From Octopus sinensis (lineage: Eukaryota), in the NCBI RefSeq assembly GCF_006345805.1, contig NC_043010.1:7068001-7132000 (forward strand): 64,000 bases of DNA, written 5' to 3'. Numbering within the stretch: the first letter of the stretch is position 1; each line of letters begins with the position of its first letter. The notes under the pieces were generated by a model. That model made no database searches and was not told the origin of the DNA. It saw only the letters and a program-made list of their open reading frames with translations. Shown piece after piece: positions 868 through 63,209 of the stretch. The position numbers and the translations under genes were made by a program.

Positions 868-1693
868 TTCTAAAGAACAACTACATCATAGAAGAGCCCT
901 TTAATTACCATAGAAAGTTGTTAAAATCACTTAAAATTAAAATTTATTTCATTTGATGTCAAAATTTTTGTTATACAACTGTTATCTGGTCACTGACACA
1001 GTTCTAGCACAACTACTTGAAAAGCCTGTCATTGTCCAGATTTTTATAGGCTTAAGGTTTTTTTAATTTTATTCTTTACTTTGTTTCTCTTTTTCCTATT
1101 GTGTTGAGAAATAGAAATGTCTGTTGTGCTCATGTAAATTACCTTTGAGTTGTTAGTCTTGAACTCTGGTCAACCATCAGTTTCTTTTCAATTTACCTTT
1201 TTGACACTGGTCACTGTTAGTGCTATCTTAAGGGTTTGGTGCACAGTGCAATTGCCGGGGGGGGGGGGGGCTCGCAGATCTAGGGGCCCAATTCTGATCT
1301 GTGTATACTGTGGCTTACTGTCAATAAATAAACACTATAGGGTCCAGTGCAGTGATTTGATCAGGGGCCTACAATGCTGTAAAAACAGCCCTGGTCACCA
1401 GTTTCTTTCAGATATATAGTTTATATTGTTTGTCAACATAATATCAATCACTGCCACACTTTGAAATTTAATTTCTCTACAAAACTGATTTCAAAAGCTT
1501 AAACAATGACCAACCACTGACTGAGGTTTTGGGGTTGAAAAAAAGTGAAAACTGGAAAGGGCTTAATGATGATCAACTGTGAGTAATGTCAAGGGTGTCA
1601 AAGTTAATCTACATGACTACAACAAACATCTATGTCCCTAAACTCAAAAGGAAAGAGAAAGTAAAATAAAGATTTTTTAAATAAAAAAAAAAA

Positions 1694-2113
1694 GCGTGGC
1701 TGTGTGGTAAGTAGCTTGCTAACCAACCACATGGTTGCGGGTTCAGTCCCACTGCGTGGCACCTTGGGCAAGTGTCTTTTGCTATAGCCCCGGGCCGACC
1801 AATGCCTTGTGAGTGGATTTGGTAGACAGAAACTGAAAGAAGCCCGTCGTATATATGTATATATATATATATATGCGTGTGTGTGTTGTGTGTCTGTGTT
1901 TGTCCTCCTAGCATTGCTTGACAACCGATGCTGGTGTGTTTATGTCCCCATCACTTAGCGGTTCGGCAAAAAGAGACCGATAGAATAAGTACTGGGCTTA
2001 CAAAAAGAATAAGTCCCGGGGTCGAGTTGCTCGACTAAAAACGGTGCTCCAGCATGGCCGCAGTCAAATGACTGAAATAAGTAAAAGAGTAAAAGAGTAA
2101 AAAAAAGAGAGTA
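1694..2113 (+). mobile_element. SINE family A (tRNA head, internal TA/TG microsatellite, AGTAAAAG tail)
   Basis: GTGGCTGTGTGGTAAG A-box, GGTTCAGTCC B-box; near-identical to 16 other copies. Confidence 0.92.
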
Positions 2114-5469: not shown

Positions 5470-5688
5470 TACTCTTTTTACTCTTTTACTTGTTTCAGTC
5501 ATTTGACTGCGGCCATGCTGGAGCACCACCTTTAATCGAGCAACTCGACCCCGGGACTTATTCTTTTGTAAGCCCAGTACTTATTCTATCGGTCTCTTTT
5601 GCCGAACCGCTAAGTGACGGGGACGTAAACACATCAGCATCGGTTGTCAAAAAATGCTAGGGGGACAAACACAGACACCCAAACACAT

Positions 5689-5721
<33 letters not shown>

Positions 5722-5892
5722 CATATATACGACGGGCTTCTTTCAGTTTCCGTCTACCAAATCCACTCACAAGGCATTGGTCGGCCCGGGGCTATAGCAG
5801 AAGACACTTGCCCAAGTTACCACGCAGTGGGACTGAACCCGGAACCATGTGGTTGGTTAGCAAGCTACTTACCACACAGCCACTCCTGCGCC
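5470..5892 (-). mobile_element. SINE family A
   Basis: Full-length reverse copy. Confidence 0.92.
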
Positions 5893-6161
5893 TATATATT
5901 TATTTTCACAAGGAAAAGGCTGATTGTAACTTCAAAGTTTTGGCTTCCATCTGCAGACTGTGATTTAGTTTGGTGTTTTAACCATTTAGTATTTAAACTG
6001 GACTTATCCAGCCAAAGTAATCTACCTGTTTTATCTTCAAACTGGCAAGATCCAGTCTCTCACACTTACCCTACAATTTTATTCTAAGACTAAACAATAA
6101 CATCATTGAATTCTGAAAGCTACAAGGTAATGCGTGATTAATTCCAAACAATGTGAATAAA

Positions 6162-13258: not shown

Positions 13259-13966
13259 TACTGAGATTAATAATAATATTTTCTTACATTGGTGCAAACA
13301 TATAGGTTCGTTAGGAAGTGGGTACCGTTGATTGAATTAATCTTCTCTGTTGCTGCCTTGAATTTTTATGTGACTGCTTGATCACTTGTAAGAGCAGCTA
13401 AATCACCCTCAGATTTCATTTAATCCTTATAAAAAAAAATGGAAAGCATGCATGGGATTATCTAATAAACAAAAAAGCAGGGTGATCATGGATGGAATGA
13501 TGTTGTTCAAAGGTCTGTTCATTCAGGAATTAACTTGGGTTTAATAACAACAACAACAACAACAGCAACAACATTCTTATGATTTTATGGGCCCTAAAGG
13601 TCAAAAGTTAAAAATCACCCAAAGACAAGATAAAACTAAATAATATAAAACAGAAAAAAAAACGATTGGTCAAAATTACAGTCATATCATCTATTATATC
13701 TTCTGAGCAGAGCAATGAAATGATTATGAGTGGAATCATTCAGTATTTGAGGATTGCTGACTTACAGAGTTATGTCAAACAATTATCAACAAGTCCATTA
13801 TGAAGATCAACCCACTACCTTCCTTTGGCCAGGAAAGGCAGGTACTTTTCCTCCATCGAGTGGCCATGGTGACAGAGGTTGTACAGTTGAAAAGATTGAA
13901 ATGACTGAGGACATATTTTCCTGTCTGAGCAGGCTCCTATCGACTTTTTTAAAATTCCACTCAGAT

Positions 13967-14346
13967 AGGCGCAGGAGTGGCTGTGTGGTAAGTAGCTTGC
14001 TAACCAACCACATGGTTCCGGGTTCAGTCCCACTGCGTGGCATCTTGGGCAAGTGTCTTCTGCTATAGCCTCGGCCCGACCAATGCCTTGTGAGTGGATT
14101 TGGTAGACGGAAACTGAAAGAAGCCCGTCGTATATATGTATATATATATATGTGTGTATATGTTTGTGTGTCTGTATTTGTCCCCTTAGCATTGCTTGAC
14201 AACCGATGCTGTTTGGCAACAGAGACCGATAGAATAAGTACTGGGCTTACAAAGAATAAGTCCCGGGGTCGACTTGCTCGACTAAAGGCGGTGCTTCAGC
14301 ATGGCCGCAGTCAAATGACTGAAGCAAGTAAAAGAGTAAAAGAGTA
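13967..14346 (+). mobile_element. SINE family A (small internal deletion)
   Basis: Similarity to the other copies. Confidence 0.92.
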
Positions 14347-31041: not shown

Positions 31042-31766
31042 TATATATATATAATATATATATATGTATATATATATATCTAATATGTATTTATACTATT
31101 GGCAATTGGAATGTGACTAAAAGATATATATATATATATCTTTTTATATTTGCAGTGAACAGATAGTGGCAAAATCACAAGGAAATGATAACTGATGTAA
31201 CGTGTCAAACCATTCCAACAAAACAAATATAGTAGCAAATGAGAAGTAATAGAAAAAAACAGATGTATGAATATTTCAGACCATTATTTTCTCATAAATT
31301 GACAGCATGGCTGTACTAATTCATTCATTGATTTTGTAGTGATGCTATGAACACATGGGTGAGGTATAGAATAATTGCGGCGTGGATGGTGGGTGGGTGT
31401 AATGATGTGTTGGGGGTGATTGTTGACTAATTGTAATTTTGAACAAAATCTTTCTTTGCCAAAAGTAATTTTCTCTGGAACAGCCTCATTATTCACAACC
31501 GTCATTTCTAATACCAAGCCATACTAGCAAGCCTCTGCGTGGTCATTTGATCCATTAGAAACAGTAATGAAGTTTCCTTTAAATCATATCCTGCCCTTTT
31601 CAAAATGGTATTAATGACTAGATTGGATAATTTAGTGTTATTTGTAAGATGATACTTGTTAGAAATGCACTTGGTAAAAACAAAAAAAAAAGAAAAGAAA
31701 AGAACAAAATGGGTAATACTGGAATGCATTTGATTATAGGAAAAAAACAAACAAAAAAAAAACAAT

Positions 31767-32170
31767 GTGCAGGAGTGGCTGTGTGGGTAAGTAGCTTGCT
31801 AACAAGCCACATGGTTCCGGGTTCAGTCCCACTGCGTGGCAGCTTGGGCAAGTGTCTTCTGCTATAGCCCCGGGCCGACCAATGCCTTGTGAGTGGATTT
31901 GGTAAACGGAAACTGAAAGAAGCCTGTCGTATATATGTGAATATATATATATATGTGTGTGTGTGTTTGTGAATCTGTGTTTGTCCCCCTAGCATTGCTT
32001 GACAACCGATGCTGGTGTGTTTACGTAGCGGTTCGGCAAAAAGAGACCGATAGGATAAGTACTGGGCTTACAAAGAATAAGTCCCGGGGTCGATTTGCTT
32101 GACTAAAGGCAGTGCTCCAGCATGGCCACAGTCAAATGACTGAAACAAGTAAAAGAGAGAAAAGAGAGTA
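31767..32170 (+). mobile_element. SINE family A
   Basis: Full-length copy. Confidence 0.92.
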
Positions 32171-33950: not shown

Positions 33951-35138
33951 TATAGTTCATTATAGAACCTTAGTTGTAGCAAAGTGGACTGGGTCATCAG
34001 AATTTTGATATTTTCTACCATATGGTAGCCCACACAGGAAAATATCAACTGATAAGAACCTTTACAATCCAGCCAAATGGTGCAATTCGTTTTATGGAGA
34101 AATGACTCAAGGTCTTTCAGAGATGAGCAGAATAACAGATAATACAGCTTAATGGTTGGCAGTTTGGAAAAAGAACCAACTGAGCAATGATCAATAGTGA
34201 AACTTGCAAGTTTTTGGAGGATGAAATACAATGGCATTGACCTGGGTCACCAAGTTCCAGAAGTGAACCATTGTTGACCTTTACTACAAGGAACTGTGCA
34301 TACTTGGTTCTGTGTATGTGCACTTGAGATATGGGAACTGAATTAACTAATTTTTTATTGTGGAGTACTTTCCAGAATTCTTCACATTTTATATGATGTA
34401 TTCTGCACATTTTTCTCTTACTGGCTAATAGAAAGAGTTTGCAAGAACTGATTTGCATATGATTAGTGTGTTACATCATCAGCATGTTGGACTGCATAAA
34501 TTTAATCAGTACACAAAATGTTAATGCCTATAGAACTGACAATCATAGAAATCACTCATTCACCCGAAAGATCCGGTGTTGTCTTATGCTGGACATCTCA
34601 AAATAGTCATAATCACATTGGTTGTCAAGTGCAGAAATATTGAGATCGATGACCATGGATGTCACAGTGAAAGAGTCATCACATGTCACAGAAGACAGAA
34701 ATGGGCAGGAAATGATAATGAAATTTTAGAATTGTTATATTTTGGTTTTTATTTATTTTAGAATGATTTATAAAGGGTTTCCCCTCTTATTAATTCAAAT
34801 TTATAACCTGGATTTGAATGTAGACATTGAAAGTTTTATTACATTTAACTCTCAGAACTATCAAAAGTAATACTCAAAGAGAAAATATTTTAAATTTTGA
34901 CATCTCACAGCTTAAGGTGTTCAAACTATATCTCTTAAATTATAGACAATTGATATTCTCCCATTAAAGAAAATAAATGAATGGTGATGGAGTGTAAACA
35001 CATTATGATTTTAAAATAATTAAAAAAGAAAAAGAATTGCAGAATGTAAAAGAGACAAAGTACTTGAATTAGAATAACAGTAGGGAGGAGAAAAAGGTTT
35101 TTGGCATCAAAAGAAAACTGATCCATAATTTTTAAAAA

Positions 35139-35312
35139 CAGGCGCAGGAGTGGCTGTGTGGTAAGTAGCTTGCTAACCAACCACATGGTTCCGGGTTCAG
35201 TCCCACTGCATGGCATCTTGGGCAAGTGTCTTCTGCTATAGCACCGGGCTGACCAATGCCTTGTGAGTGGATTTGGTAGACGGAAACTGAAGAAGCCTGT
35301 CGTATATATGTG

Positions 35313-35343
<31 letters not shown>

Positions 35344-35562
35344 TTGTGTGTCTGTGTTTGTCCTCCTAGCATTGCTTGACAACCGATGCTGGTGTGTTTA
35401 CGTCCCCGTCACTTAGCGGTTCAGCAAAAGAGACCGATAGAATAAGTACTGGGCTTACAAAAGAATAAGTCCCGGGGTCGATTTGCTCGACTAAAGGCGG
35501 TGCTCCAGCATGGCCGCAGTCAAATGACTGAAACAAGTAAAAGAGAGTAAAAGAAAAAAGAG
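35139..35562 (+). mobile_element. SINE family A
   Basis: Full-length copy. Confidence 0.92.
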
Positions 35563-36010
35563 AGTTGTTGCATGGAATAGTGGTAAGAATAGTTGTTTTG
35601 TGGATGTTACTGGTCCATGGCTTCACCCTGACCATATAGAGCAATGGCCAAAGACCTTCTAGACATGTCTATCTCATTGTAATCTATATTCAGGACTGTA
35701 TTGTCCAATGTGATTTTCTGTGTTTCATGCAAGCAGAATTTGATTTGAGGGAAATTTGACTACTGATTCTTGGTGGTCAAGTTAATATGTATAGATGGTT
35801 CAGGACAGTGGGAATGTTAATGATTCTGATAAGTGAATGTTCAGAAAGTGTAACAAGAAATGATGAATGCTTGGAAGGGAAGTAATTCAAATGGAAGTAA
35901 GCAGAAAAATAAAAAGGCATAGCAGGAAAAATTGAAAAGAAGGGTGGTTAAAAATTACTGAGTGTGCAGTATAATTTAAATTGAGAGAGATACTGAAGAA
36001 ATGTGAATAA

Positions 36011-36427
36011 TAGGCGCAGGAGTGGCTGTGTGGTAAGTAGCTTGCTAACCAACCACATGGTTCCGGGTTCAGTCCCACTGCATGGCATCTTGGGCAAGTG
36101 TCTTCTGCTATAGCCCTGGGCCGACCAATGCCTTGTGAGTGGATTTGGTAGACAGAAACTGAAAGAAGCCTGTCGTATATATGTGTATATATATATATAT
36201 ATGTGTGTGTTTGTGTGTCTGTGTTTGTATCCCTAGCATTGCTTGACAACCGATGCTGGTGTGTTTACGTCCCCGTCACTTAGCTGTTCGGCAAAAGAGA
36301 CCGATAGAATAAGTACTGGCTTACAAAGAATAAGTCCCGGGGTTGATTTGATCAACTTAAGGTGGTGCTCCAGCATGGCCGCAGTCAAATGACTGAAACA
36401 AGTAAAAGAGTAAAGAGTAAAGAGTAA
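36011..36427 (+). mobile_element. SINE family A
   Basis: Full-length copy. Confidence 0.92.
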
Positions 36428-38523: not shown

Positions 38524-38578
<55 letters not shown>

Positions 38579-38716
38579 CAGAGATGTACTCGCATAGCAA
38601 GTAATTTGATCTGAGATCGTGTGCTGAAATGAAAACAATTGCAGTGTGGAAGGTGTTTATAAGCCATTTAAGAAACACACAAAAGCCGTTCGATTCACTT
38701 CAACATTTACGTTTAA

Positions 38717-38766
38717 TTTGTCAAAATATTTTCGTCGCTAAAATCCGCGACCTGTTCACTGACAAA
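38717..38766 (-). ncRNA. Mirror copy of the G3:C8 hammerhead motif
   Basis: Exact reverse complement of 38791-38840. Confidence 0.7.
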
Positions 38767-38790
38767 ATCCGTGCTGCATCCGAGATGCAT

Positions 38791-38840
38791 TTTGTCAGTG
38801 AACAGGTCGCGGATTTTAGCGACGAAAATATTTTGACAAA
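38791..38840 (+). ncRNA. Minimal type-I hammerhead ribozyme motif, G3:C8 core variant
   Basis: TTTGTCA-GTGAACA-G-GTCGC(GGATTTTA)GCGAC-GAAA-ATAT-T-T-TGACAAA: 7-bp stem I, 5-bp stem II, palindromic stem III AATATT. Confidence 0.7.
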
Positions 38841-38954
38841 TTAAACTTAAATGTTGAAGTGAATCGAACGGCTTTTGTGTGTTTCTTAAATGGCTTATAA
38901 ACACCTTCCACGCTGCAATTGTTATATATATATAAACTCATACATACATAATCA

Positions 38955-39145
38955 TCCTCATCATCATCATTTAACGTCCGCTTTCCATGCTAGCATGGGT
39001 TGGACGATTTGACTGAGGTCTGGTGAACCAGACTCCAATCTGATCTGACAGTTTCTACAGCTGGATGCCCTTCCTAACGCCAACCACTCCGAGAGTGTAG
39101 TGGGTGCTTTTATGTGCCAGTCAGGCGGTACTGGCAATGACCTCG
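38955..39145 (-). mobile_element. RTE-type 3' end
   Basis: Same tail, reverse orientation. Confidence 0.75.
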
Positions 39146-45885: not shown

Positions 45886-46650
45886 GGTGCGTGTGTGTTT
45901 GTGTCTGTTTGATAACTGGTGTTGGTATGTTTACATGTGTGTGACTAAGTGGTTTGGCAAGAGAGACCGATAGAATAAATGCCAGATTTAATAAAGAGAA
46001 TAAATAAATACTGGCATCAATTCACTCAGCGAAAAATTCTTCAAGGTGGTGTCCCAGCAAGTAAATGATAAAAGGTAAAGTATGTGTTTGTGTGTATGTA
46101 TGCATACACACACACACACATACATACATTCTGATAGTTATGCACTGATATCAATGGGTTGAGAAACATACAAAAATTCATTACTTGTAGCATTTCAGGC
46201 ATTAATTTAATTCTTCAAGTAGATAATTTACTTGCACTCATAAATGCAAGGATAATTAGGTGTAAAAAATAGTCAATCATTGTCAAGAAGGATATATGTG
46301 TGTGCATATAAATACACATATTTGTGCATATACACACATATATGTATATGTATATATATATATATAATATATATATGTATATATATAGAATGTATATATA
46401 TATATATATAGAATATAAATATATATATGTATATATATAGAATGTATATATATATTATATAGAATATAAATTATATATATATATATATAGAATATATATA
46501 TATATATATATAGAATATATTCTATATATATATATGTGTGGAGATGTTCTTGACCGACAAGTGTTTTGATCTGAGATTGTGAGTTGAAACTAAAAGAAAT
46601 GCAGCAATTGTTTATTCTACACTGTAGTCATTTTATATATATATCTATAT

Positions 46651-46685: not shown

Positions 46686-47005
46686 TTTGATACTTTGATA
46701 CTTTGATAGGTTTCGGCCATTATTGGCCCAGGCCATGTCTAACTTAATAGCACCACCTGGTGAAGTCTTTCAAGTCAGAATTTGGGCACTATGGCCCACT
46801 CAAGTAGAGAGTTATTGTTTACAGAGACATATCCGGGTGTAGGGGTTATCCGGGATTTCTTGAAGGAATCTGTCCAAAGACTTCTTGAACCCTATAGGGT
46901 CAGTTTCTGTTTTAATGCGTTTTGGTGTAATGTTAAGAGAGCGGGGCCAATTGAGGTGAAATATTGTGCCGTATTGTTGTTATGAGATGAGAGTGCGATT
47001 TTTGT
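46683..47005 (-). mobile_element. L2/CR1-group LINE 3' end
   Basis: Frameshifted [40 protein letters not shown]; 3' stem-loop GGCC-AATAAT-GGCC and (ATCAAAGT)n tail. Confidence 0.65.
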
Positions 47006-47178: not shown

Positions 47179-47981
47179 AAACCTAATTTTCTATATATCT
47201 AATAAAAGATTTTATTTTCATTGAGCACGTATGTTCCAATTGTATTGGCAAAAAAAAGCGCATCTGCACTATTCATTATTGAAACTTTGCCTCGTTTAAG
47301 ACTGATCACTGATCTTAGTTGCTAAAAGTTTTACAGCTTCCTTTTGTCTCTTTATCTTTATTATATATTACAACTAACCTCAATCAACATCCACCTTACA
47401 TTTAATATGAAATATCACTGGTATCAATATCACTATTGAAAGATCATTTTCACTTTTTGTTTTTAATAAAGTTGCTTTAGTTTTATGCAGAGAAACTTTT
47501 ATGGTAAAACAATGAAACTAACTGGCAAAATTCAAAAAGTAAACTAATATATATCAGACAACAAAACATTGTTAAGACAGTGAAAGAAGTTGTGCGTAAA
47601 ATAATCTAAACTTAGAAAGAGGAGAAACTGGAAGTATGGGAGTGGCAATGTCCAAAACCTAATGACAATGAATAAAAGAAATCCAACACTGACAGTTTTC
47701 CATCTACTTAATAATATTGTTGCAGAACAATGGTTAATTCCATGAATAGGTATCGATTAAAATGTTAAAAATTCAGATGATATAATCTTCAATATGTATT
47801 GGTAGATAGGTAGGTTGGTGTTTCAGTAGGTACAGTCAGGTATTTTTATATATTCACAACTATTGAATTCATTAGCCAATGATGGTGGATCTAAATGGTC
47901 ATTCAACTCATTTGAAATACTAGCCACATTTTTCTCAAATTACTTGCTAGATTTTACTAAAAAAAAATTCAAATTTTATCA

Positions 47982-48391
47982 AGGCGCAGGAGTGGCTGTG
48001 TGGTAAGTAGCTTGCTAACCAACCACATGGTTCCGAGTTCAGTCCCATTGCGTGGCATCATGGGCAAGTGTCTTCTGCTATAGCCCTGGGCTGACCAATG
48101 CCTTGTGAGTGGATTTGGTAGACGGAAACTGAAATAAGCCTGTCGTATATATGCATATATATATTTATGTATGTGTGTGTGTTTGTGTTTGTCCCCCCAA
48201 CATTGCTTGACAACCGATGCTGGTGTGTTTACGTCCCCGTCACTTAGCGGTTCAGCAAAAGAGACCGATAGAATAAGTACTGGGCTTACAAAAAGAATAA
48301 GTCCCTGGGTCGAGTTGCTCGACTAAAGGTGGTGCGCCAGCATGGCCGCAGTCAAATGACTGAAACAAGTAAAAGAGTAAAAGAGAGAGTA
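47982..48391 (+). mobile_element. SINE family A
   Basis: Full-length copy in Pcdh intron 1. Confidence 0.92.
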
Positions 48392-50285: not shown

Positions 50286-51673
50286 TTATGTGTGTAGATA
50301 GATAGATAGACAGACAGATAGATAGATACTATTGGTATTAAGGAACAAAAACATTTCATTTTCATTAGTTCAGTTCTTTTTTTATCTCGCTGCCTAAATG
50401 TTCCTTTTGCAATTTGATTTTGGGAACAAAATGTTTAAATTACAAGTCTTTTTAGACATTAATTGGAAAGTGATATTTTCTTCATGTCTTATGTAAAACT
50501 TCTGACTTAAGACAAGAGATGCTGACAAATCTCTTGTTGACTACAAACGAGTAAAAGAGACAAGAAAGAATAGGAAAGTGGTTGTTCACAACTTTATCCA
50601 TCACATTTGAGATGTTGTTACTGAAGCCCAGGTCAATCCTGATCAAATAGATCTATGATGAATGTCGTTCCAATCATGACCATCACATCTTTTTTACATA
50701 GAAGGAACCCAAGACCACATCATCCACAGTATCCTTTTCTAAGATGGTAGGGCACAATTTGAAGGGATTTAGTTGCTATTCTTAGCAGGCCAAAAGACTA
50801 TGTAGAAGCTCCTTCATTGGCCTATACTATGATAATAGTTTGCAGAATCAGAGAAGTTGGCATTTTTAGGTACAGCTTTTACAGTATCCTACATTTCTGT
50901 AAGTCATTTTTAGTTGTACAATGAAAGAGAAAAGTTAAAGAATTTAGCAAACTGCAATTCAAAGACTGAAAAAAGTAAAAGTATGAAAGAATAAAAGAGA
51001 ACAACTAAGTTTGAAATTTGCAGTTTGAGAGAGGTAGCATGAACATTCTGAAGACTGATTGCCTTGTAGCAAACTAGAGCTGATTTGAGGCAAATCAGCT
51101 GGGTTTAAGTAGAAAAGAGGTTTCAAGTGATACCTTTATGACGTTAGAATATATTGCTTCAAACTATTTTGTCTTTTGCACTACTACATGTAAATAACTT
51201 GTTCTCAGAGAATAAATTATCATCTGTAATTTGTGTAAATTTATTTTCAGTTTATCAAGTTTACTTTCTAACTAATCTTATCTTCAGATACTGGAGGATT
51301 TGATTGCTTTTGTTGTGTGTACCAATTCGTAGTAATTATGGTTAGATATCTAAAGTTAAGTACAACTTGATTTTGATTATGGTGAAGAGCCTGCATATGT
51401 AAAATACTTCAAGATATATCATTTTATTAATTACAATATAATGACTTTAATTTGCTTGGATTAAGTAGTGTTGCTTTAAGTTTTAATTAAGAAAGATAAA
51501 AAGGCAGCACATTTTCATTTGTAAGAATTGCTGATAAATTATTACAGGTTAATTGTTATTATCAATTGCTTAAAAGTATTCTACACAGAGTTGTATATAT
51601 ATAGAGAGAGAGTGAGAGAGGAAGAGCTGAGGGAGAAAGAGATTGATAGATACATAGATAGATAGATGGAGAG

Positions 51674-51704
<31 letters not shown>

Positions 51705-51835
51705 GAGAGAGATGGAGAGAGAGAGAATGGTGGAAGGAGACACAAACGTATGAACAGATCAATATAAATGCTCATATACATATAATTCATACAAATGTAC
51801 AGGTATATTATTAATTGCATAAGACATTGACTTAC

Positions 51836-54265
51836 CTGAAAACTTCCTCCTCGACTGGTAGAACAATACATTCCTGAAAGTGAATTTTTTTTGTATGGTA
51901 ATGCATACTCAGGATGAGATTGTCTTCCTAATCCAGAGGGCAGAGAGCTCCGATTCTTGCTAAAAGATGTTGCCACGGGGACGGGGACATCATACTGAAG
52001 TGTCATTTGTTCACTATCATATCCAGGCTGTCTACTGGCACTCATACTTTTGTTAGCAGTATTTACGTTTGCTCTGTAATTTGTATTTCTCTGGTGGTTT
52101 CTCCGTACAATACACACTGTTATCGACACTACTGTGGCTACTGATACTATCACAGCTGCCAATAATATAATTATTACAAGATTAATGTGGATTTTATCAT
52201 CTGATTTGGTATCTGGTGGAGTTAACATTTTAGATGTCTTATTACTAACTGTAAGCGTCAAGGATAAAGTAGTCACTGTTGATAAAACTGGGATACCACT
52301 ATCCTTGACTATGAATTTCAAATCATATGATCCAGCATCATTTTGGTAAACTGTTCGAGAGAATGACAATACACCCGTGTAAGGATTAATGGTAAATAAT
52401 TGCTTGTCGTTACCACCTAAAATTTCATATCTGAGAAAAGCATTCACATGACTGTCCCTGTCTGAGGCTCTCAAAACAGTAATATCTTTTTTACTCTGTG
52501 GATGGTAATAAATATCCAAGCTGAAGGGGTTAACACTAGGAAATGTAAAATATGGGGCATTGTCATTTTTGTCCATGACTTCAATGATGACATTGGCTGT
52601 GTTGTTTAATGACGGTGTTCCATTGTCTTTGACAAAAACTTGAAAATGGTATATTTCTTGTTGTTCTCGATCCAGTGATTGTGTTGTTGAAATAAACCCA
52701 AAATTAGAAATTTCAAAAGGAAGTACATGCTTGTTTTTATCTAATAAAGAGTATGATAGTTGCCCTCCTTCCCCAAGGTCTTGATCTGTCACATTAATGA
52801 AACCAATAGGGAAGAATGGCTTCTCATTTTCATAAGTTAGAAATTTAAACAATTCTTTTGAAAAATGAGGTTGTACATCGTTAATGTCCATTACTTGGAT
52901 GGAAAAATTTCTTTCCGTTTTCAAAGATGGAAATCCTTTGTCTTGGCAACTAATTGTAAAATTGATATAACTTTCAGTTTCTCGATCCACTGGATTCTTG
53001 ACAACAACTTTATATTTCATTTTTCCAAGACTCTGCAGCAGAAACTTATCATGTTTAAGGTCACAAGTAACTTCTCCATTCTGTCCGGCATCATTATCTG
53101 TTACTTTAACAAAAGCAATAAAACTGCCAACTTTAATCCCTTCTGAAAACCTTGCTGTTATTCCTGTTGATTTGGAAACAAATTTAACATCAATCTGTGG
53201 TGGATTATTCTGTTGGTTTAGAACATTCACTAAAACTGTTGCAATGGAGCTCAGGGGTGGACTACCATTATCTGTAGCTTCAATAAATAATTTGTATAGA
53301 AGTTTTTTTCGTTGACCAAATGTTTTTACTAAAAATATCTCTCCTGTATTTTCATTCAGTGCAAAATTTGATTTAGCTGCATCTGATGTTTTAGAACTGA
53401 AATAGTATGAAACTTGGCCATTTTTGCCTGAGTCTAAATCACTGGCAGACACTTGTGCAACCCGCATATCTTTGTGATAGCCATTATTTACAGAAACATT
53501 GTATAAATTCTGAGAGAAGTGAGGTGGGTTGTCATTGACATCAGTAACTGTAATAAGAACGTTTAAATGACCTTCTTGAGGTGGGGAGCCACCATCTCTG
53601 GCAATAACTTTTAACATGTAAGTGTCCTTTTTTTCTCTGTCTAATTTATTTTCAAGAGTAATTCCAAGTGAAGAGGATCCATCCACTCGTTTTGATTCAG
53701 ATAAAGTGAATGGATCACCATCATGCTTTTCTAACTGGTAGGTAATCTGAGAATTTATAACTCCAACGTCCTTGTCAATAGCATTAGGTATTGATTTTAT
53801 CATTCCTTTTCCATCACCTTCGTCAAATTGAAGATTGATCTGTTTTTTGGGGAATACAGGTTTATGATCATTAGCATCTTCAATAATTACTTTGATTTCT
53901 AATAACTTGATAAAAGATTCTTCCTTTTGAACAGCTACATCAACCATTCTGAAACATTCAGTGTTGTATTTACAGAGGGATTCAGCATCTAACTTTTGGC
54001 CAGTATACAATTTTCCTGATTTAAAAACTGTAAATAATTGATTGCTACTGTTTACATCTTGTTCTAACTGGCTGAAGCTGACCAAACCTAATTCTTCAAT
54101 TAGAACATTGTTTATCAAATGAACATCGGAACCAATGTCCCCTACATAAGTGCCTGAGTTTTGACCTTCTTCTACATGATATATAAAGTCCACACAGCAA
54201 GACTTATGTAACAAAAACAACACCAGACAGACTTGTGTTAACATGCTTCTAAGATGAGTCTTCAT
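51836..54265 (-). CDS. Pcdh: Protocadherin, large coding exon (signal peptide, EC1-EC6, TM, proximal cytoplasmic tail)
   Basis: Within the 918-aa ORF: six cadherin repeats (DANDHKP, DVNDNPP, NQQNNPP, DINDVQP, DKNDNAP linkers; LDRE; DxD; DxGxP), EC1 C-x5-C (CKYNTEC), and hydrophobic TM INLVIIILLAAVIVSVATVVSITVCIV. Pyrimidine tract/CAG acceptor with first exon base 54314; first ATG 54265 (alternative 54244); CAG|GTAAGT donor after 51836, phase 0. Confidence 0.96.
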
Positions 54266-54405
54266 CGGCGACCAACAGGCAAAGTTTTGTTTTAAGTTGT
54301 AAATTGAAATAATTCTGAAATAGAAAAAGAAAAACATGACAATTTATAAAGATAATTTGTATTCAAATCACTAATATTAGACATTCAAATGTATTTGAAG
54401 TGAAG

Positions 54406-62672: not shown

Positions 62673-63058
62673 ACTCTTTTACTTGTTTCAGTCATTTGAC
62701 TGCGGCCATGCTGGAGCACCGCCTTTAGTCGAGCAAATCGACCCCGGGACTTATTCTTTGTAAGCCCAGTACTTATTCTATCGTTCTCTTTTGCCGAACC
62801 ACTAAGTGACGGGGACGTAAACACACCAGCATCGGTTGTCAAGCAATGCTAGGGGGACAAACACACACACACACACATACACATATATACATATATACGA
62901 CAGGCTTCTTTCAGTTTCCATCTACCAAATCCACTCACAAGGCATTGGTCGGCCCGGGGCTATAGCAGAAGACACTTGCCCAAGATGCCACGCAGTGGGA
63001 CTGAACCCGGAACCATGTGGTTGGTTAGCAAGCTACTTACCACACAGCCACTCCTGCA
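62673..63058 (-). mobile_element. SINE family A
   Basis: Full-length reverse copy. Confidence 0.92.
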
Positions 63059-63209
63059 CCTATATATATATATATCTGTATATTTATATTGATATACATG
63101 TGCAAATGAATATACATAAATCATTATTTCAACATGTTTTTGAATGCTGGCATTGGTTAATATGAGTGTCGTTGTCTCCTTTCTTAATTAATTAAGTACA
63201 AAAAAATAA

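What the first reader, a model, noticed from the sequence alone, without database searches (positions are those of the whole stretch)
38634..38923. 135-bp near-perfect palindrome with a hammerhead whose C3-G8 core pair is swapped to G3-C8
Seen: arms differ at only 2 of 135 positions. Each arm encodes TTTGTCA|GTGAACA|G|GTCGC-loop-GCGAC|GAAA|ATAT|T|T|TGACAAA, with predicted cleavage after 38833 (+). Established: positions 3 and 8 form a tertiary Watson-Crick pair, and the G3:C8 double change partly rescues activity that either single change loses. Inference: two changes that preserve the pair suggest selection for catalysis, and a CUGANGA-based search would miss this motif. Read-through transcripts would form a 135-bp duplex that masks the ribozyme (also a likely ADAR substrate). 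Transcripts starting in the centre could fold the active form, giving a possible switch. It lies in Pcdh intron 2, so the mirror copy is sense in the pre-mRNA.
Basis: partly seen in the sequence, partly recalled or inferred. Interest (0 to 1): 0.85.

Follow-up and report, generated by a model that had tools for sequence, protein, structure and literature searches.

The report
Retroelement insertion carrying swapped-core hammerhead motifs
The palindrome is one ordinary insertion of a short, very abundant Penelope-type retroelement that lands as two head-to-head copies, and each copy carries a minimal hammerhead-ribozyme motif whose core C3-G8 pair is naturally swapped to G3-C8, a variant I found no report of and whose catalytic activity is untested.

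Summary
Arms 38634-38768 and 38789-38923 are complementary at 133 of 135 positions, and each arm holds the stated motif.

The palindrome is not a purpose-built switch. Its anatomy matches published Penelope-like-element (PLE) insertions: two inverted 5'-truncated copies with 3' ends outward, a variable centre, a tail at one end, variable target duplications, and (TA)n targets.

The hammerhead reading holds up better than expected:
- The motif has the three non-core hallmarks of PLE minimal hammerheads.
- It sits where PLE hammerheads sit relative to the 3' junction.
- It is very unlikely by chance.
- PLE-type motifs in the same genome carry C-G, U-A and G-C at positions 3-8.
- An older sister family keeps all 31 core and stem positions, including G3 and C8, while the rest of the unit diverged about 21%. 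Changes fall only at N7, in the loops, and in a palindrome-preserving indel.

Individual copies decay neutrally, no head-to-tail tandems exist, and catalysis is untested. This is a new variant of a known kind. The host-gene switch idea has no support.

The parts
38579..38921 (.). Whole insertion: one copy of a short non-autonomous Penelope-type retroelement, made of two head-to-head copies plus a one-sided tail
   Evidence: Homology among 39 copies starts at ..TTA|CGGAGATGTACTCGC and ends at ..GCTGCAATTG. TSDs in other copies: L010 11 bp, L050 12 bp, L057 10 bp, L016 about 16 bp.
38579..38635 (-). 'Tail': a 57-nt 3' extension present on the left copy only (sense strand is minus)
   Evidence: 38 of 39 pairs carry exactly one tail, none carries two. 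Single copies occur with or without it. PMC11167929 identifies the PLE tail as the sequence between two alternative reverse-transcription start sites.
38636..38780 (-). Left copy body (sense on minus strand), 3' end outward at CAATTG, 5' end at the centre
   Evidence: BLAST of the unit consensus: unit 3-208 = window 38780-38576 at 97.6%.
38781..38921 (+). Right copy body (sense on plus strand), tail-less, slightly more 5'-truncated (lacks GCACGGA present in other copies)
   Evidence: Unit 17-150 = 38790-38923. The centre varies among copies.
38791..38840 (+). Minimal type-I hammerhead motif: stem I 38791-97/38834-40; core G3 U4 G5 A6 A7 C8 A9 = 38798-38804; extra G 38805; stem II 38806-10/38819-23; G12 A13 A14 A15.1 = 38824-27; palindromic AUAU 38828-31; U16.1 38832; U17 38833 (predicted cleavage after 38833)
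   Evidence: Descriptor hit. The MFE of the single arm is this two-stem fold, z = -2.7 to -3.8.
38717..38766 (-). Mirror hammerhead motif on the minus strand (G3 = 38759, C8 = 38754; predicted cleavage after 38724, reading 5'->3' on the minus strand)
38526..38578 (.). (TA)n microsatellite: target site on the left; its continuation is at 38922-38935 on the right
   Evidence: Most copies sit inside (TA)n.
46540..46640 (-). Heavily 5'-truncated copy of the older sister family (about 30 nt of body plus a related tail), also in (TA)n
51581..54343 (-). Context only: protocadherin-type large exon (5 cadherin repeats)
   Evidence: 920-aa open frame; Pfam Cadherin, E = 5e-73.

Best explanation
The 343-bp feature is a single insertion of a short (about 150-nt body plus about 57-nt tail) non-autonomous retroelement mobilised by Penelope-like-element (PLE) machinery.

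How the palindrome forms (inferred from published biochemistry): a PLE reverse transcriptase/GIY-YIG endonuclease nicked both strands of a (TA)n target and primed reverse transcription on both. This left two copies with their 3' ends facing outward and their variably truncated 5' ends meeting in the middle. That arrangement is the palindrome. The tail is present on the copy whose cDNA started at the distal of two alternative start sites.

The motif: 88 nt upstream of its tail-less 3' end, each copy carries a PLE-type minimal type-I hammerhead. It has no real helix III, a palindromic AUAU, an extra base after A9, and a G10.1-C11.1 pair. Its tertiary C3-G8 pair is replaced by G3-C8.

What the data show: the motif is a conserved cis-module of the element's RNA, kept by selection on the master copies.

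What is inferred: it most likely has weak self-cleaving activity that depends on a dimer and/or protein and is dispensable for insertion, as in the one PLE studied biochemically. In a genomic copy transcribed as part of a host RNA, the motif is buried in a 135-bp duplex and has no second sense copy to pair with, so this locus is very probably inert as a ribozyme.
For: Family and architecture:
- At least 40 full-length copies at 88-97% identity; the core 19-mer occurs 6,270 times.
- The unit is asymmetric, its ends are not inverted repeats, and TSDs are 10-16 bp.
- Single-arm copies exist, as do pairs whose inverted arm is deeply truncated at the centre-facing end.
- 38 of 39 pairs have exactly one tail.
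- At least 6-8 of 39 pairs have arms with different multi-nucleotide loop variants, so two RNA templates were used.

Literature match:
- PMC8557442: PLE insertions show 5' truncation, an adjacent inverted copy, a one-sided tail, and a (TA)n bias.
- PMC11167929: the PLE protein extends both strands, has two RT start sites that define the tail, prefers AT-rich targets, and has its hammerhead cut site 85-92 nt upstream of the RT start.

Autonomous PLEs are abundant in this genome: 4,846 GIY-YIG candidates, and an intact 780-aa RVT_1 + GIY-YIG ORF ending in (TA)n.

Hammerhead identity:
- All three hallmarks that PMC4209133 lists as independent of its search descriptor are present.
- Chance expectation is about 0.003 per window even at relaxed settings.
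- The same architecture occurs with C3-G8 in L018's flank and with U3-A8 in the autonomous PLE, at matching distances from the 3' junction (core start about 120 nt and 100 nt from the (TA)n junction, versus 123 nt here).
- The older sister family (at least 1,579 candidates; 38 copies chosen without reference to the motif) has 31 of 31 core and stem positions identical, while the rest of the unit differs at 20.9%. Differences fall only at N7, in loop II, and as a palindrome-preserving 2-nt indel in loop III (p about 0.001-0.002).
- U17 rather than C17 avoids a G3-C17 trap (inference; compare PMC3884650).
Against: - No cleavage data exist.
- In the laboratory, C3G/G8C double mutants only partly restore activity (PMC11167929).
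- The predicted MFE extends stem I by a G3-U17 wobble that would compete with the active core.
- Unit 5' ends do not coincide with the predicted cleavage site.
- Head-to-tail tandems that could give a cis dimer are absent (0 and 1 hits).
- The helix-III palindrome is all A-U and therefore weak.
- No autonomous element sharing sequence with the unit was found.
- Rfam hammerhead models give no hit, but they also miss natural C3/G8 revertant copies, so that negative is uninformative.
- Other blocks of the unit are also conserved between the two families, so conservation alone does not prove catalysis.
Confidence: 0.72

Rival explanations
1. The motif descends from a hammerhead and is kept by selection, but for a non-catalytic reason, such as a binding or dimerisation structure for the PLE ribonucleoprotein. 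On this view the G3-C8 version no longer cleaves.
For: HHR catalytic mutants did not affect PLE insertion in vitro, and no RNA-seq reads began or ended at the cut site (PMC11167929). Metazoan PLE min-HHRs have very low in vitro activity (PMC4209133). Unit 5' ends are not at the cleavage site. No tandems exist. A G3-U17 wobble forms in the MFE.
Against: The pattern of what is conserved between the two families follows the catalytic-core map base for base: U4 G5 A6 A9 G12 A13 A14 A15.1 U16.1 and the 3-8 pair are kept, while N7 and the loops are free. A mere protein-binding hairpin does not obviously require that. The double mutant does retain partial activity in a PLE hammerhead.
Confidence: 0.3
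2. Chance resemblance: a nested hairpin in a transposon arm that happens to spell a near-hammerhead, with no ribozyme ancestry.
For: Two core positions deviate from the consensus. Rfam gives no hit. A relaxed descriptor is expected to give on the order of 100 chance hits in a 2.7-Gb genome (my extrapolation).
Against: There were no random hits at the observed quality in 80 Mb. The extra nucleotide, the G10.1-C11.1 pair and the palindromic loop III all match PLE min-HHRs. The motif is at the correct position in a PLE-type element. The sister family conserves 31 of 31 positions against a 21% background.
Confidence: 0.07
3. A host-level regulatory device: a ribozyme in a Pcdh intron switched on or off by palindrome formation, or a dedicated ADAR substrate.
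For: The duplex is extremely stable. One motif is in sense in any transcript. The element lies downstream of a minus-strand cadherin exon.
Against: It is one of thousands of near-identical insertions scattered over all chromosomes. Copies decay neutrally. The two arms already differ by ordinary substitutions, one of them at a CpG (38645 reads T where the family consensus and the other arm have the C of a CpG). The palindrome is explained by the integration mechanism.
Confidence: 0.03
4. A cut-and-paste MITE or foldback DNA transposon, or a tRNA-derived SINE moved by a LINE.
For: Long inverted repeats are typical of foldback elements and MULE-type MITEs. A-box-like (TTGCAGCGTGG) and B-box-like (GTTCGATTCAC) strings occur on the antisense strand of each arm (sequence).
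Against: The termini are not inverted repeats, because the 57-nt tail is on one side only. TSD length varies from 10 to 16 bp. Single arms and centre-truncated arms exist. Arms are mosaic. ARAGORN finds no tRNA and Rfam no tRNA match. The box-like strings are antisense to the strand whose 3' end is constant.
Confidence: 0.04

Closest known systems
Minimal hammerhead ribozymes of Penelope-like elements (Cervera & de la Pena 2014, PMC4209133; the Lunse, Weinberg & Breaker 2016 dimer study is cited in PMC6765202 but I could not read it)
   Same: Type I topology. Helix III absent or 1 bp, with a palindromic 15.2-16.2/loop 3. An extra nucleotide between A9 and G10.1. A G10.1-C11.1 pair. Location near the 3' end of a PLE-type unit. 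Frequent dual motifs on opposite strands 100-700 bp apart. Thousands of copies per genome. A natural covariation of the 3-8 pair is already known (U3-A8 in Schistosoma mansoni).
   Different: The 3-8 pair here is G-C, the exact reversal of the canonical pair. In the searchable library I found it only as a laboratory double mutant. Stem I is long (7 bp) in the young family. The carrier is a roughly 200-nt non-coding unit, not a pLTR of a coding PLE.
PLE insertion architecture (Craig et al. 2021, PMC8557442; Frangieh et al. 2024, PMC11167929)
   Same: 5' truncation, an inverted adjacent copy, a one-sided tail, AT-rich/(TA)n targets, and hammerhead-to-3'-junction geometry of about 85-100 nt.
   Different: The tail is longer (57 nt versus the reported 30-40 bp). 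The element has no ORF and no pLTR-style partial tandems. No autonomous partner with shared sequence was identified.
Metazoan non-LTR retrozymes and hammerhead satellites or SINE-like elements (newt satellite 2, Schistosoma Sm-alpha, mussel and axolotl repeats; PMC7229834)
   Same: Short non-autonomous repeats carrying type-I hammerheads with a 1-bp helix III capped by a palindromic tetraloop. Proposed to depend on PLEs (bioRxiv 10.64898/2026.07.22.740005, abstract only).
   Different: Those are head-to-tail tandem arrays that yield circRNAs. This family is dispersed as single or head-to-head copies, and tandems are essentially absent.
Laboratory C3G/G8C hammerhead double mutants
   Same: The same two base changes, which preserve the tertiary Watson-Crick pair. 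Partial rescue of cleavage is reported, including in a PLE hammerhead (PMC11167929).
   Different: Those are engineered. Here the swap is the natural, long-maintained state of two retroelement families.

Membership tests
Hammerhead ribozyme (type I, PLE-type minimal) | Junction of helix I and helix II flanking the two core strands, in type I order | tested here: met
   Descriptor hit. The MFE of the single arm is this fold, z = -2.7 to -3.8.
Hammerhead ribozyme (type I, PLE-type minimal) | Invariant core bases U4 G5 A6 A9 G12 A13 A14 A15.1 U16.1, and H17 not G | tested here: met
   38799-38801, 38804, 38824-38827, 38832, 38833 = U. Identical in the sister-family consensus.
Hammerhead ribozyme (type I, PLE-type minimal) | Positions 3 and 8 able to form the tertiary Watson-Crick pair | tested here: met
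   G3 (38798) and C8 (38803). The pair is kept as G-C in both families. C-G and U-A versions of the same architecture occur in the same genome.
Hammerhead ribozyme (type I, PLE-type minimal) | Canonical identity C3/G8 (CUGANGA box) | tested here: not met
   The box reads GUGAACA. Only 5 of more than 6,270 arms read CUGAAGA. For this reason I call it a variant, not a canonical member.
Hammerhead ribozyme (type I, PLE-type minimal) | PLE min-HHR hallmarks: extra nucleotide between 9 and 10.1, G10.1-C11.1, palindromic 15.2-16.2/loop 3 | tested here: met
   G 38805; G 38806 pairs with C 38823; AUAU 38828-31, which is AU in the sister family and still palindromic. Criteria from PMC4209133.
Hammerhead ribozyme (type I, PLE-type minimal) | Site-specific self-cleavage 3' of position 17 | not testable with these tools
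   Needs in vitro transcription and cleavage assays.
Hammerhead ribozyme (type I, PLE-type minimal) | Match to curated Rfam hammerhead models | tested here: not met
   No hit at E <= 10. The models also miss natural C3/G8 revertant copies of this family, so the test is uninformative for min-HHRs.
Penelope-like element insertion (non-autonomous derivative) | Constant 3' end, variable 5' truncation, and an adjacent inverted 5'-truncated copy | tested here: met
Penelope-like element insertion (non-autonomous derivative) | 'Tail' extension present at only one end | tested here: met
   38 of 39 pairs have one tail, 0 have two. Here it is 57 nt, versus 30-40 bp in the literature.
Penelope-like element insertion (non-autonomous derivative) | AT-rich or (TA)n target preference with variable-length TSD | tested here: met
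Penelope-like element insertion (non-autonomous derivative) | Autonomous RT + GIY-YIG partner in the genome that shares cis sequence with the unit | tested here: inconclusive
   Intact PLEs exist and also target (TA)n. None of the six 3' regions examined shares sequence with the unit.
MITE / foldback DNA transposon | Terminal inverted repeats at both extremities and a fixed-length TSD | tested here: not met
   The left terminus GGAGATGTACTCGC is unrelated to the right terminus GCTGCAATTG. TSDs are 10-16 bp.
Non-LTR retrozyme (tandem hammerhead repeats) | Head-to-tail tandem arrays of the unit | tested here: not met
   0 tail-to-head junctions and 1 coincidental pair genome-wide. The L058 array is a secondary 1.18-kb host-segment duplication.
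tRNA-derived SINE | tRNA-related head on the sense strand | tested here: not met
   ARAGORN finds none. No Rfam tRNA match.
microRNA precursor | Score above the Rfam gathering threshold for a miRNA family | tested here: not met
   Best match is MIR2646 at 94 bits versus a 245-bit threshold. These are generic long-hairpin matches.

The most novel reading that the evidence does not exclude
G3-C8 is a catalytically competent natural hammerhead core that two retroelement families have maintained for a long time. If so, CUGANGA-anchored censuses systematically undercount PLE hammerheads, and PLE clades described as lacking canonical hammerheads may carry swapped-core versions.

A further speculative step follows from two observations: the arms are often templated by different RNAs, and exactly one arm carries the tail. 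The palindromic loop III might pair two template RNAs in trans inside a dimeric PLE ribonucleoprotein. That would link the 'double hammerhead' to dual-strand target-primed reverse transcription.
Probability: 0.3. Interest if true: 0.65.

Novelty: new variant of a known kind. Interest (0 to 1): 0.48.

Why it matters
If the G3-C8 motif cleaves, it would be natural confirmation of the C3-G8 tertiary pair, which is otherwise supported by crystal structures, engineered double mutants and one other reported natural covariation (U3-A8). It would also show that the usual search boxes miss whole hammerhead families.

Independently of catalysis, the family is a clean natural record of PLE integration, which has so far been characterised in vitro for a single element. 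It shows head-to-head copies from two different RNA templates and a strict one-tail rule.

Thousands of near-perfect 135-bp inverted repeats in and around genes are also a large potential source of long dsRNA in this genome. That is relevant to RNA editing, which was not tested here.

For the window itself the practical message is that this is a transposon insertion, not a gene-specific regulatory device.

Tried and rejected
- Rfam scan of the region returned only sub-threshold long-hairpin miRNA models. I rejected it as evidence against a hammerhead after one search showed the models also miss C3/G8 revertant copies.
- MITE/foldback idea: rejected on asymmetric termini, variable TSDs and single arms.
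- tRNA-SINE idea (A/B-box-like strings): rejected. The strings are antisense and no tRNA is detected.
- The genome's canonical type-I hammerheads (RF00163) share no sequence with the unit.
- Within-family conservation as a test of selection: uninformative. The family is too young, and rare-variant rates are equal inside and outside the motif.
- Double-variant census at positions 3 and 8: 37 arms, with pairing-competent combinations not clearly enriched. The excess of U3..G8 (13 arms) may be a small sub-lineage. Inconclusive.
- Stem-II compensatory changes in old copies: all four CpG double-decay combinations are about equally frequent (sequences), so I did not run the count of structure pairs.
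- Autonomous partner search: six PLE 3' regions showed no sequence sharing.
- L058 same-strand pair: a secondary tandem duplication of a host segment, not pLTRs.
- Tandem search: negative.
- Organism: the assembly statistics resemble an octopus assembly I recall from memory. A literature look-up did not confirm this, so it is left unnamed.
- Lunse et al. 2016 could not be read.

Full report
**1. The observation**

The inverted repeat is real. Arms 38634-38768 and 38789-38923 are 135 nt long and 99% complementary, with a 20-nt spacer. There are exactly two mismatches: 38645/38912 and 38710/38847.

Each arm contains the stated string. On the plus strand, 38791-38840 reads TTTGTCA GTGAACA G GTCGC-GGATTTTA-GCGAC GAAA ATAT T T TGACAAA. 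The mirror copy is on the minus strand at 38766-38717.

**2. It is a dispersed repeat, and the unit is larger than the palindrome**

- The 290-bp query finds at least 40 full-length copies at 88-97% identity on many chromosomes of the 2.72-Gb assembly.
- A 19-mer across the proposed core occurs 6,270 times.
- In an alignment of 39 copies, homology continues 57 nt to the left of the palindrome (window 38579-38635: CAGAGATGTACTCGCATAGCAAG...) but stops at CAATTG on the right. The unit is therefore asymmetric and its termini are not inverted repeats.
- Most copies sit in (TA)n. Where the flanks are informative, target-site duplications have variable length: 11 bp in L010, about 10 bp in L005, about 16 bp in L016, 12 bp in L050 and 10 bp in L057.
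- The many single-arm hits resolve into three classes: single units with the tail, single units without it, and pairs whose inverted arm is deeply truncated at its centre-facing end.
- The outward ends are constant and the centre is variable. The outward ends are therefore 3' ends and the centre holds the 5' ends.

**3. What makes such a structure**

The published description of Penelope-like-element (PLE) insertions matches point for point. Craig et al. (PMC8557442) report strong 5' truncation, an inverted 5'-truncated copy immediately adjacent that forms inverted repeats, a 30-40-bp tail often at only one end, and a bias for (TA)n.

The one biochemical study (PMC11167929) shows four relevant things about a PLE protein:
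- It nicks and extends both DNA strands.
- It starts reverse transcription at two adjacent internal sites, and the tail is the sequence between them.
- It prefers AT-rich targets.
- Its hammerhead cut site lies 85-92 nt upstream of the reverse-transcription start.

Three results from this genome fit that model:
- 38 of 39 pairs carry exactly one tail and none carries two.
- At least 6-8 of 39 pairs have arms with different multi-nucleotide loop variants, and within-pair divergence (3.2%) is barely below between-pair divergence (4.4%). The two arms are therefore often copied from different RNA molecules. This argues against snap-back synthesis and for dual priming.
- Autonomous PLEs are abundant: 4,846 GIY-YIG candidates, many with open frames of about 781 aa. 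One intact 780-aa ORF has RVT_1 plus a C-terminal GIY-YIG domain, and its insertion also ends directly in (TA)n.

The palindrome is therefore a by-product of integration.

**4. Is the hammerhead real?**

*Against it at first sight.* Rfam gives no hammerhead hit even at E <= 10. However, five natural copies that happen to read CTGAAGA (C3/G8) are not detected either. The Rfam models simply do not cover helix-III-less motifs, so the negative carries no weight.

*For it.*

(a) Architecture. Cervera & de la Pena (PMC4209133) list features of PLE minimal hammerheads that were not part of their search descriptor. Three of them apply to a single motif: a nucleotide between A9 and 10.1, a conserved G10.1-C11.1 pair, and a palindromic 15.2-16.2/loop 3. 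All three are present here. They also report dual motifs on opposite strands 100-700 bp apart, and a natural U3-A8 covariation.

(b) Chance. A descriptor encoding this architecture, with any Watson-Crick 3-8 pair and stems of at least 4 bp, hits only these two sites in the window. In 80 Mb of composition-matched random sequence it gave 2 weak A-U hits and none at the observed quality.

(c) Real-genome background. In 204 kb of other sequence from this genome, the descriptor finds 62 arms of this family (all G-C) and one other motif. That one is a canonical C3-G8 min-HHR in a (TA)n-flanked fragment, with its cleavage site about 97 nt from the 3' junction.

(d) The intact autonomous PLE carries a sense-strand min-HHR with U3-A8. 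Its core starts 100 nt before the (TA)n junction.

(e) Position. In this family the core starts 123 nt, and the cleavage site lies 88 nt, before the tail-less 3' end. One genome therefore shows C-G, U-A and G-C at positions 3-8 in the same architecture at the same place in PLE-type units.

(f) Fold. A single-arm RNA adopts the two-stem fold as its minimum-free-energy structure (z = -2.7 to -3.8).

**5. The evolutionary test**

Within the young family nothing can be learned about selection. Subfamily differences are few. After removing shared variants, rare-variant rates are the same in core plus stems (1.57%) and in the rest of the arm (1.66%; p = 0.84). The copies are neutral, as expected for dead insertions.

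A 79%-similar tail fragment elsewhere in the window (46540-46640) led to an older sister family with at least 1,579 candidates at 77-85% identity. I fetched 34 further copies selected only by the region downstream of the motif and added 4 already in hand.

The sister-family consensus reads UUUUGUCA GUGACCA G GUCGC-AGUUUUGA-GCGAC GAAA AU U U UGACA. Compared with the young family:
- It differs at N7, the one unconstrained core position.
- It differs at 3 of 8 loop-II positions.
- It has a 2-nt indel that leaves loop III palindromic (AU versus AUAU).
- It differs in the two outermost stem-I pairs.
- All 11 core bases, including G3 and C8, are identical, as are all 10 stem-II positions and the 10 positions of the shared 5-bp stem I.

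The remainder of the unit differs at 29 of 139 aligned positions, or 20.9%. The three 'indel' columns that the aligner placed inside TGACA are a gap-placement artefact. From one search's rate, the probability of 0 changes in 31 positions is about 7e-4 (my arithmetic). A Fisher test on the earlier alignment gave 0.0018.

The older family also forms head-to-head pairs. Its individual copies again decay neutrally: the four CpG double-decay combinations in stem II are about equally frequent.

Selection has therefore acted on the master sequences, and the pattern of what it preserved is the hammerhead map.

**6. What remains against activity**

- Laboratory C3G/G8C mutants recover only part of the activity.
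- Metazoan PLE min-HHRs are poor ribozymes in vitro and need dimers or protein.
- The fold prediction adds a G3-U17 wobble that would compete with the core.
- Unit 5' ends lie 15-20 nt upstream of stem I, not at the cleavage site.
- Head-to-tail tandems that could supply a cis dimer are absent.
- The helix-III palindrome is all A-U.
- Other blocks of the unit are conserved too, so a non-catalytic constraint cannot be excluded.

**7. This locus**

Transcribed as one RNA, the insertion forms a near-perfect duplex of -240 kcal/mol, against -15 kcal/mol for the hammerhead fold. But a read-through transcript contains only one sense motif, so there is neither an accessible fold nor a partner.

A cadherin-repeat exon lies at 51581-54343 on the minus strand. 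An intronic location is plausible, but 'intron 2' is unverified.

I found no evidence for a host function.

**8. Comparison with what is known, and novelty**

The feature works like, and almost certainly descends from, PLE minimal hammerheads. It fails only the canonical C3/G8 identity while keeping the pair.

In the searchable literature, G3-C8 appears only as an engineered mutant, and U3-A8 is the only natural 3-8 covariation reported. I could not read Lunse et al. 2016, so prior description elsewhere cannot be excluded.

I rate it a new variant of a known kind and of moderate interest. The palindrome and the 'switch' are ordinary. The long-maintained swapped core is the noteworthy part, together with the natural evidence for two-template, one-tail integration.

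Noticed in passing
L001-L039 (39 copies of the family, incl. window 38579-38921): 38 of 39 head-to-head pairs carry the tail on exactly one arm, one has none and none has two. If each strand chose its start site independently, two-tail and no-tail pairs should be common. The two reverse-transcription start sites therefore seem to be coupled to the two strands. The in vitro study (PMC11167929) reported no strand difference.
   Followed up: partly
L017, L025, L028, L031, L033, L038 (also L026, L034): The two arms of one insertion carry different multi-nucleotide stem-II-loop variants (ATTTT vs TCTTA[A/T]). The arms were therefore copied from different RNA molecules, which is natural evidence for two-template integration.
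   Followed up: partly
L072 659-703 and L076 253-2595 (G000:C6:82397500-82401700): An intact-looking 780-aa PLE ORF (RVT_1 + GIY-YIG). A sense-strand minimal hammerhead with the U3-A8 core covariation (ATTT TTGATAA GGTTC..GAACC GAAA CATG T A AAAT) starts 100 nt before a (TA)n junction. In sister copies L070 and L075, stem I and the 10.1-11.1 pair are degenerate.
   Followed up: partly
L018 minus strand, about 2649-2683 of the reverse complement: A canonical C3-G8 minimal hammerhead (GTTT CTGAAGA A GAGC-TTT-GCTC GAAA CG T A AAAC) in a roughly 200-nt fragment flanked by (TA)n on both sides. It probably belongs to another PLE-derived family.
   Followed up: partly
L040-L049 (e.g. G000:C13:29988995-29989039): A separate family of canonical type-I hammerheads (GTACCTGAAGAGACCC..GGGTCGAAACATGTGTCGTAC). 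Eight score above the Rfam Hammerhead_1 threshold. They share conserved flanks and no sequence with the family studied here.
   Followed up: no
genome-wide: Among the 37 arms with both position 3 not G and position 8 not C, 13 read UUGAAGA (a U3-G8 wobble). That is more than independent mutation would suggest and may mark a small sub-lineage.
   Followed up: no
window 1604-1939, 5629-6087, 13807-14295, 31618-32067, 34935-35408, 35887-36264, 47969-48322, 62821-63165: At least eight copies of another high-copy repeat, seen as spurious open frames (..THQHRLSSNARGTNTDTQ..IHSQGIGRPGAIAEDTCPRCHAVGLNPEPCGWLASYLPHSHSCAY..). Not identified.
   Followed up: no
window 38960-39140; also the right flank of L014: Another repeat (..CATCATCATTTAACGTCCGCTTTCCATGCTAGCATGGGTTGGACG..) lies just right of the insertion. 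The same sequence flanks copy L014. It may be a SINE-like element with a (CAT)n head, or a preferred neighbour.
   Followed up: no
window 46700-47000 (minus strand): The 3' end of a different retroelement, ending in (TCAAAGTA)n, abuts the (TA)n tract that received the sister-family fragment at 46540-46640.
   Followed up: no
L058 (G000:C1:8296303-8301321): A 1,182-bp tandem duplication (97% identity between repeats) of a host segment that contains one single-arm insertion plus microsatellites. It is a macrosatellite-like secondary event, not a pLTR.
   Followed up: yes
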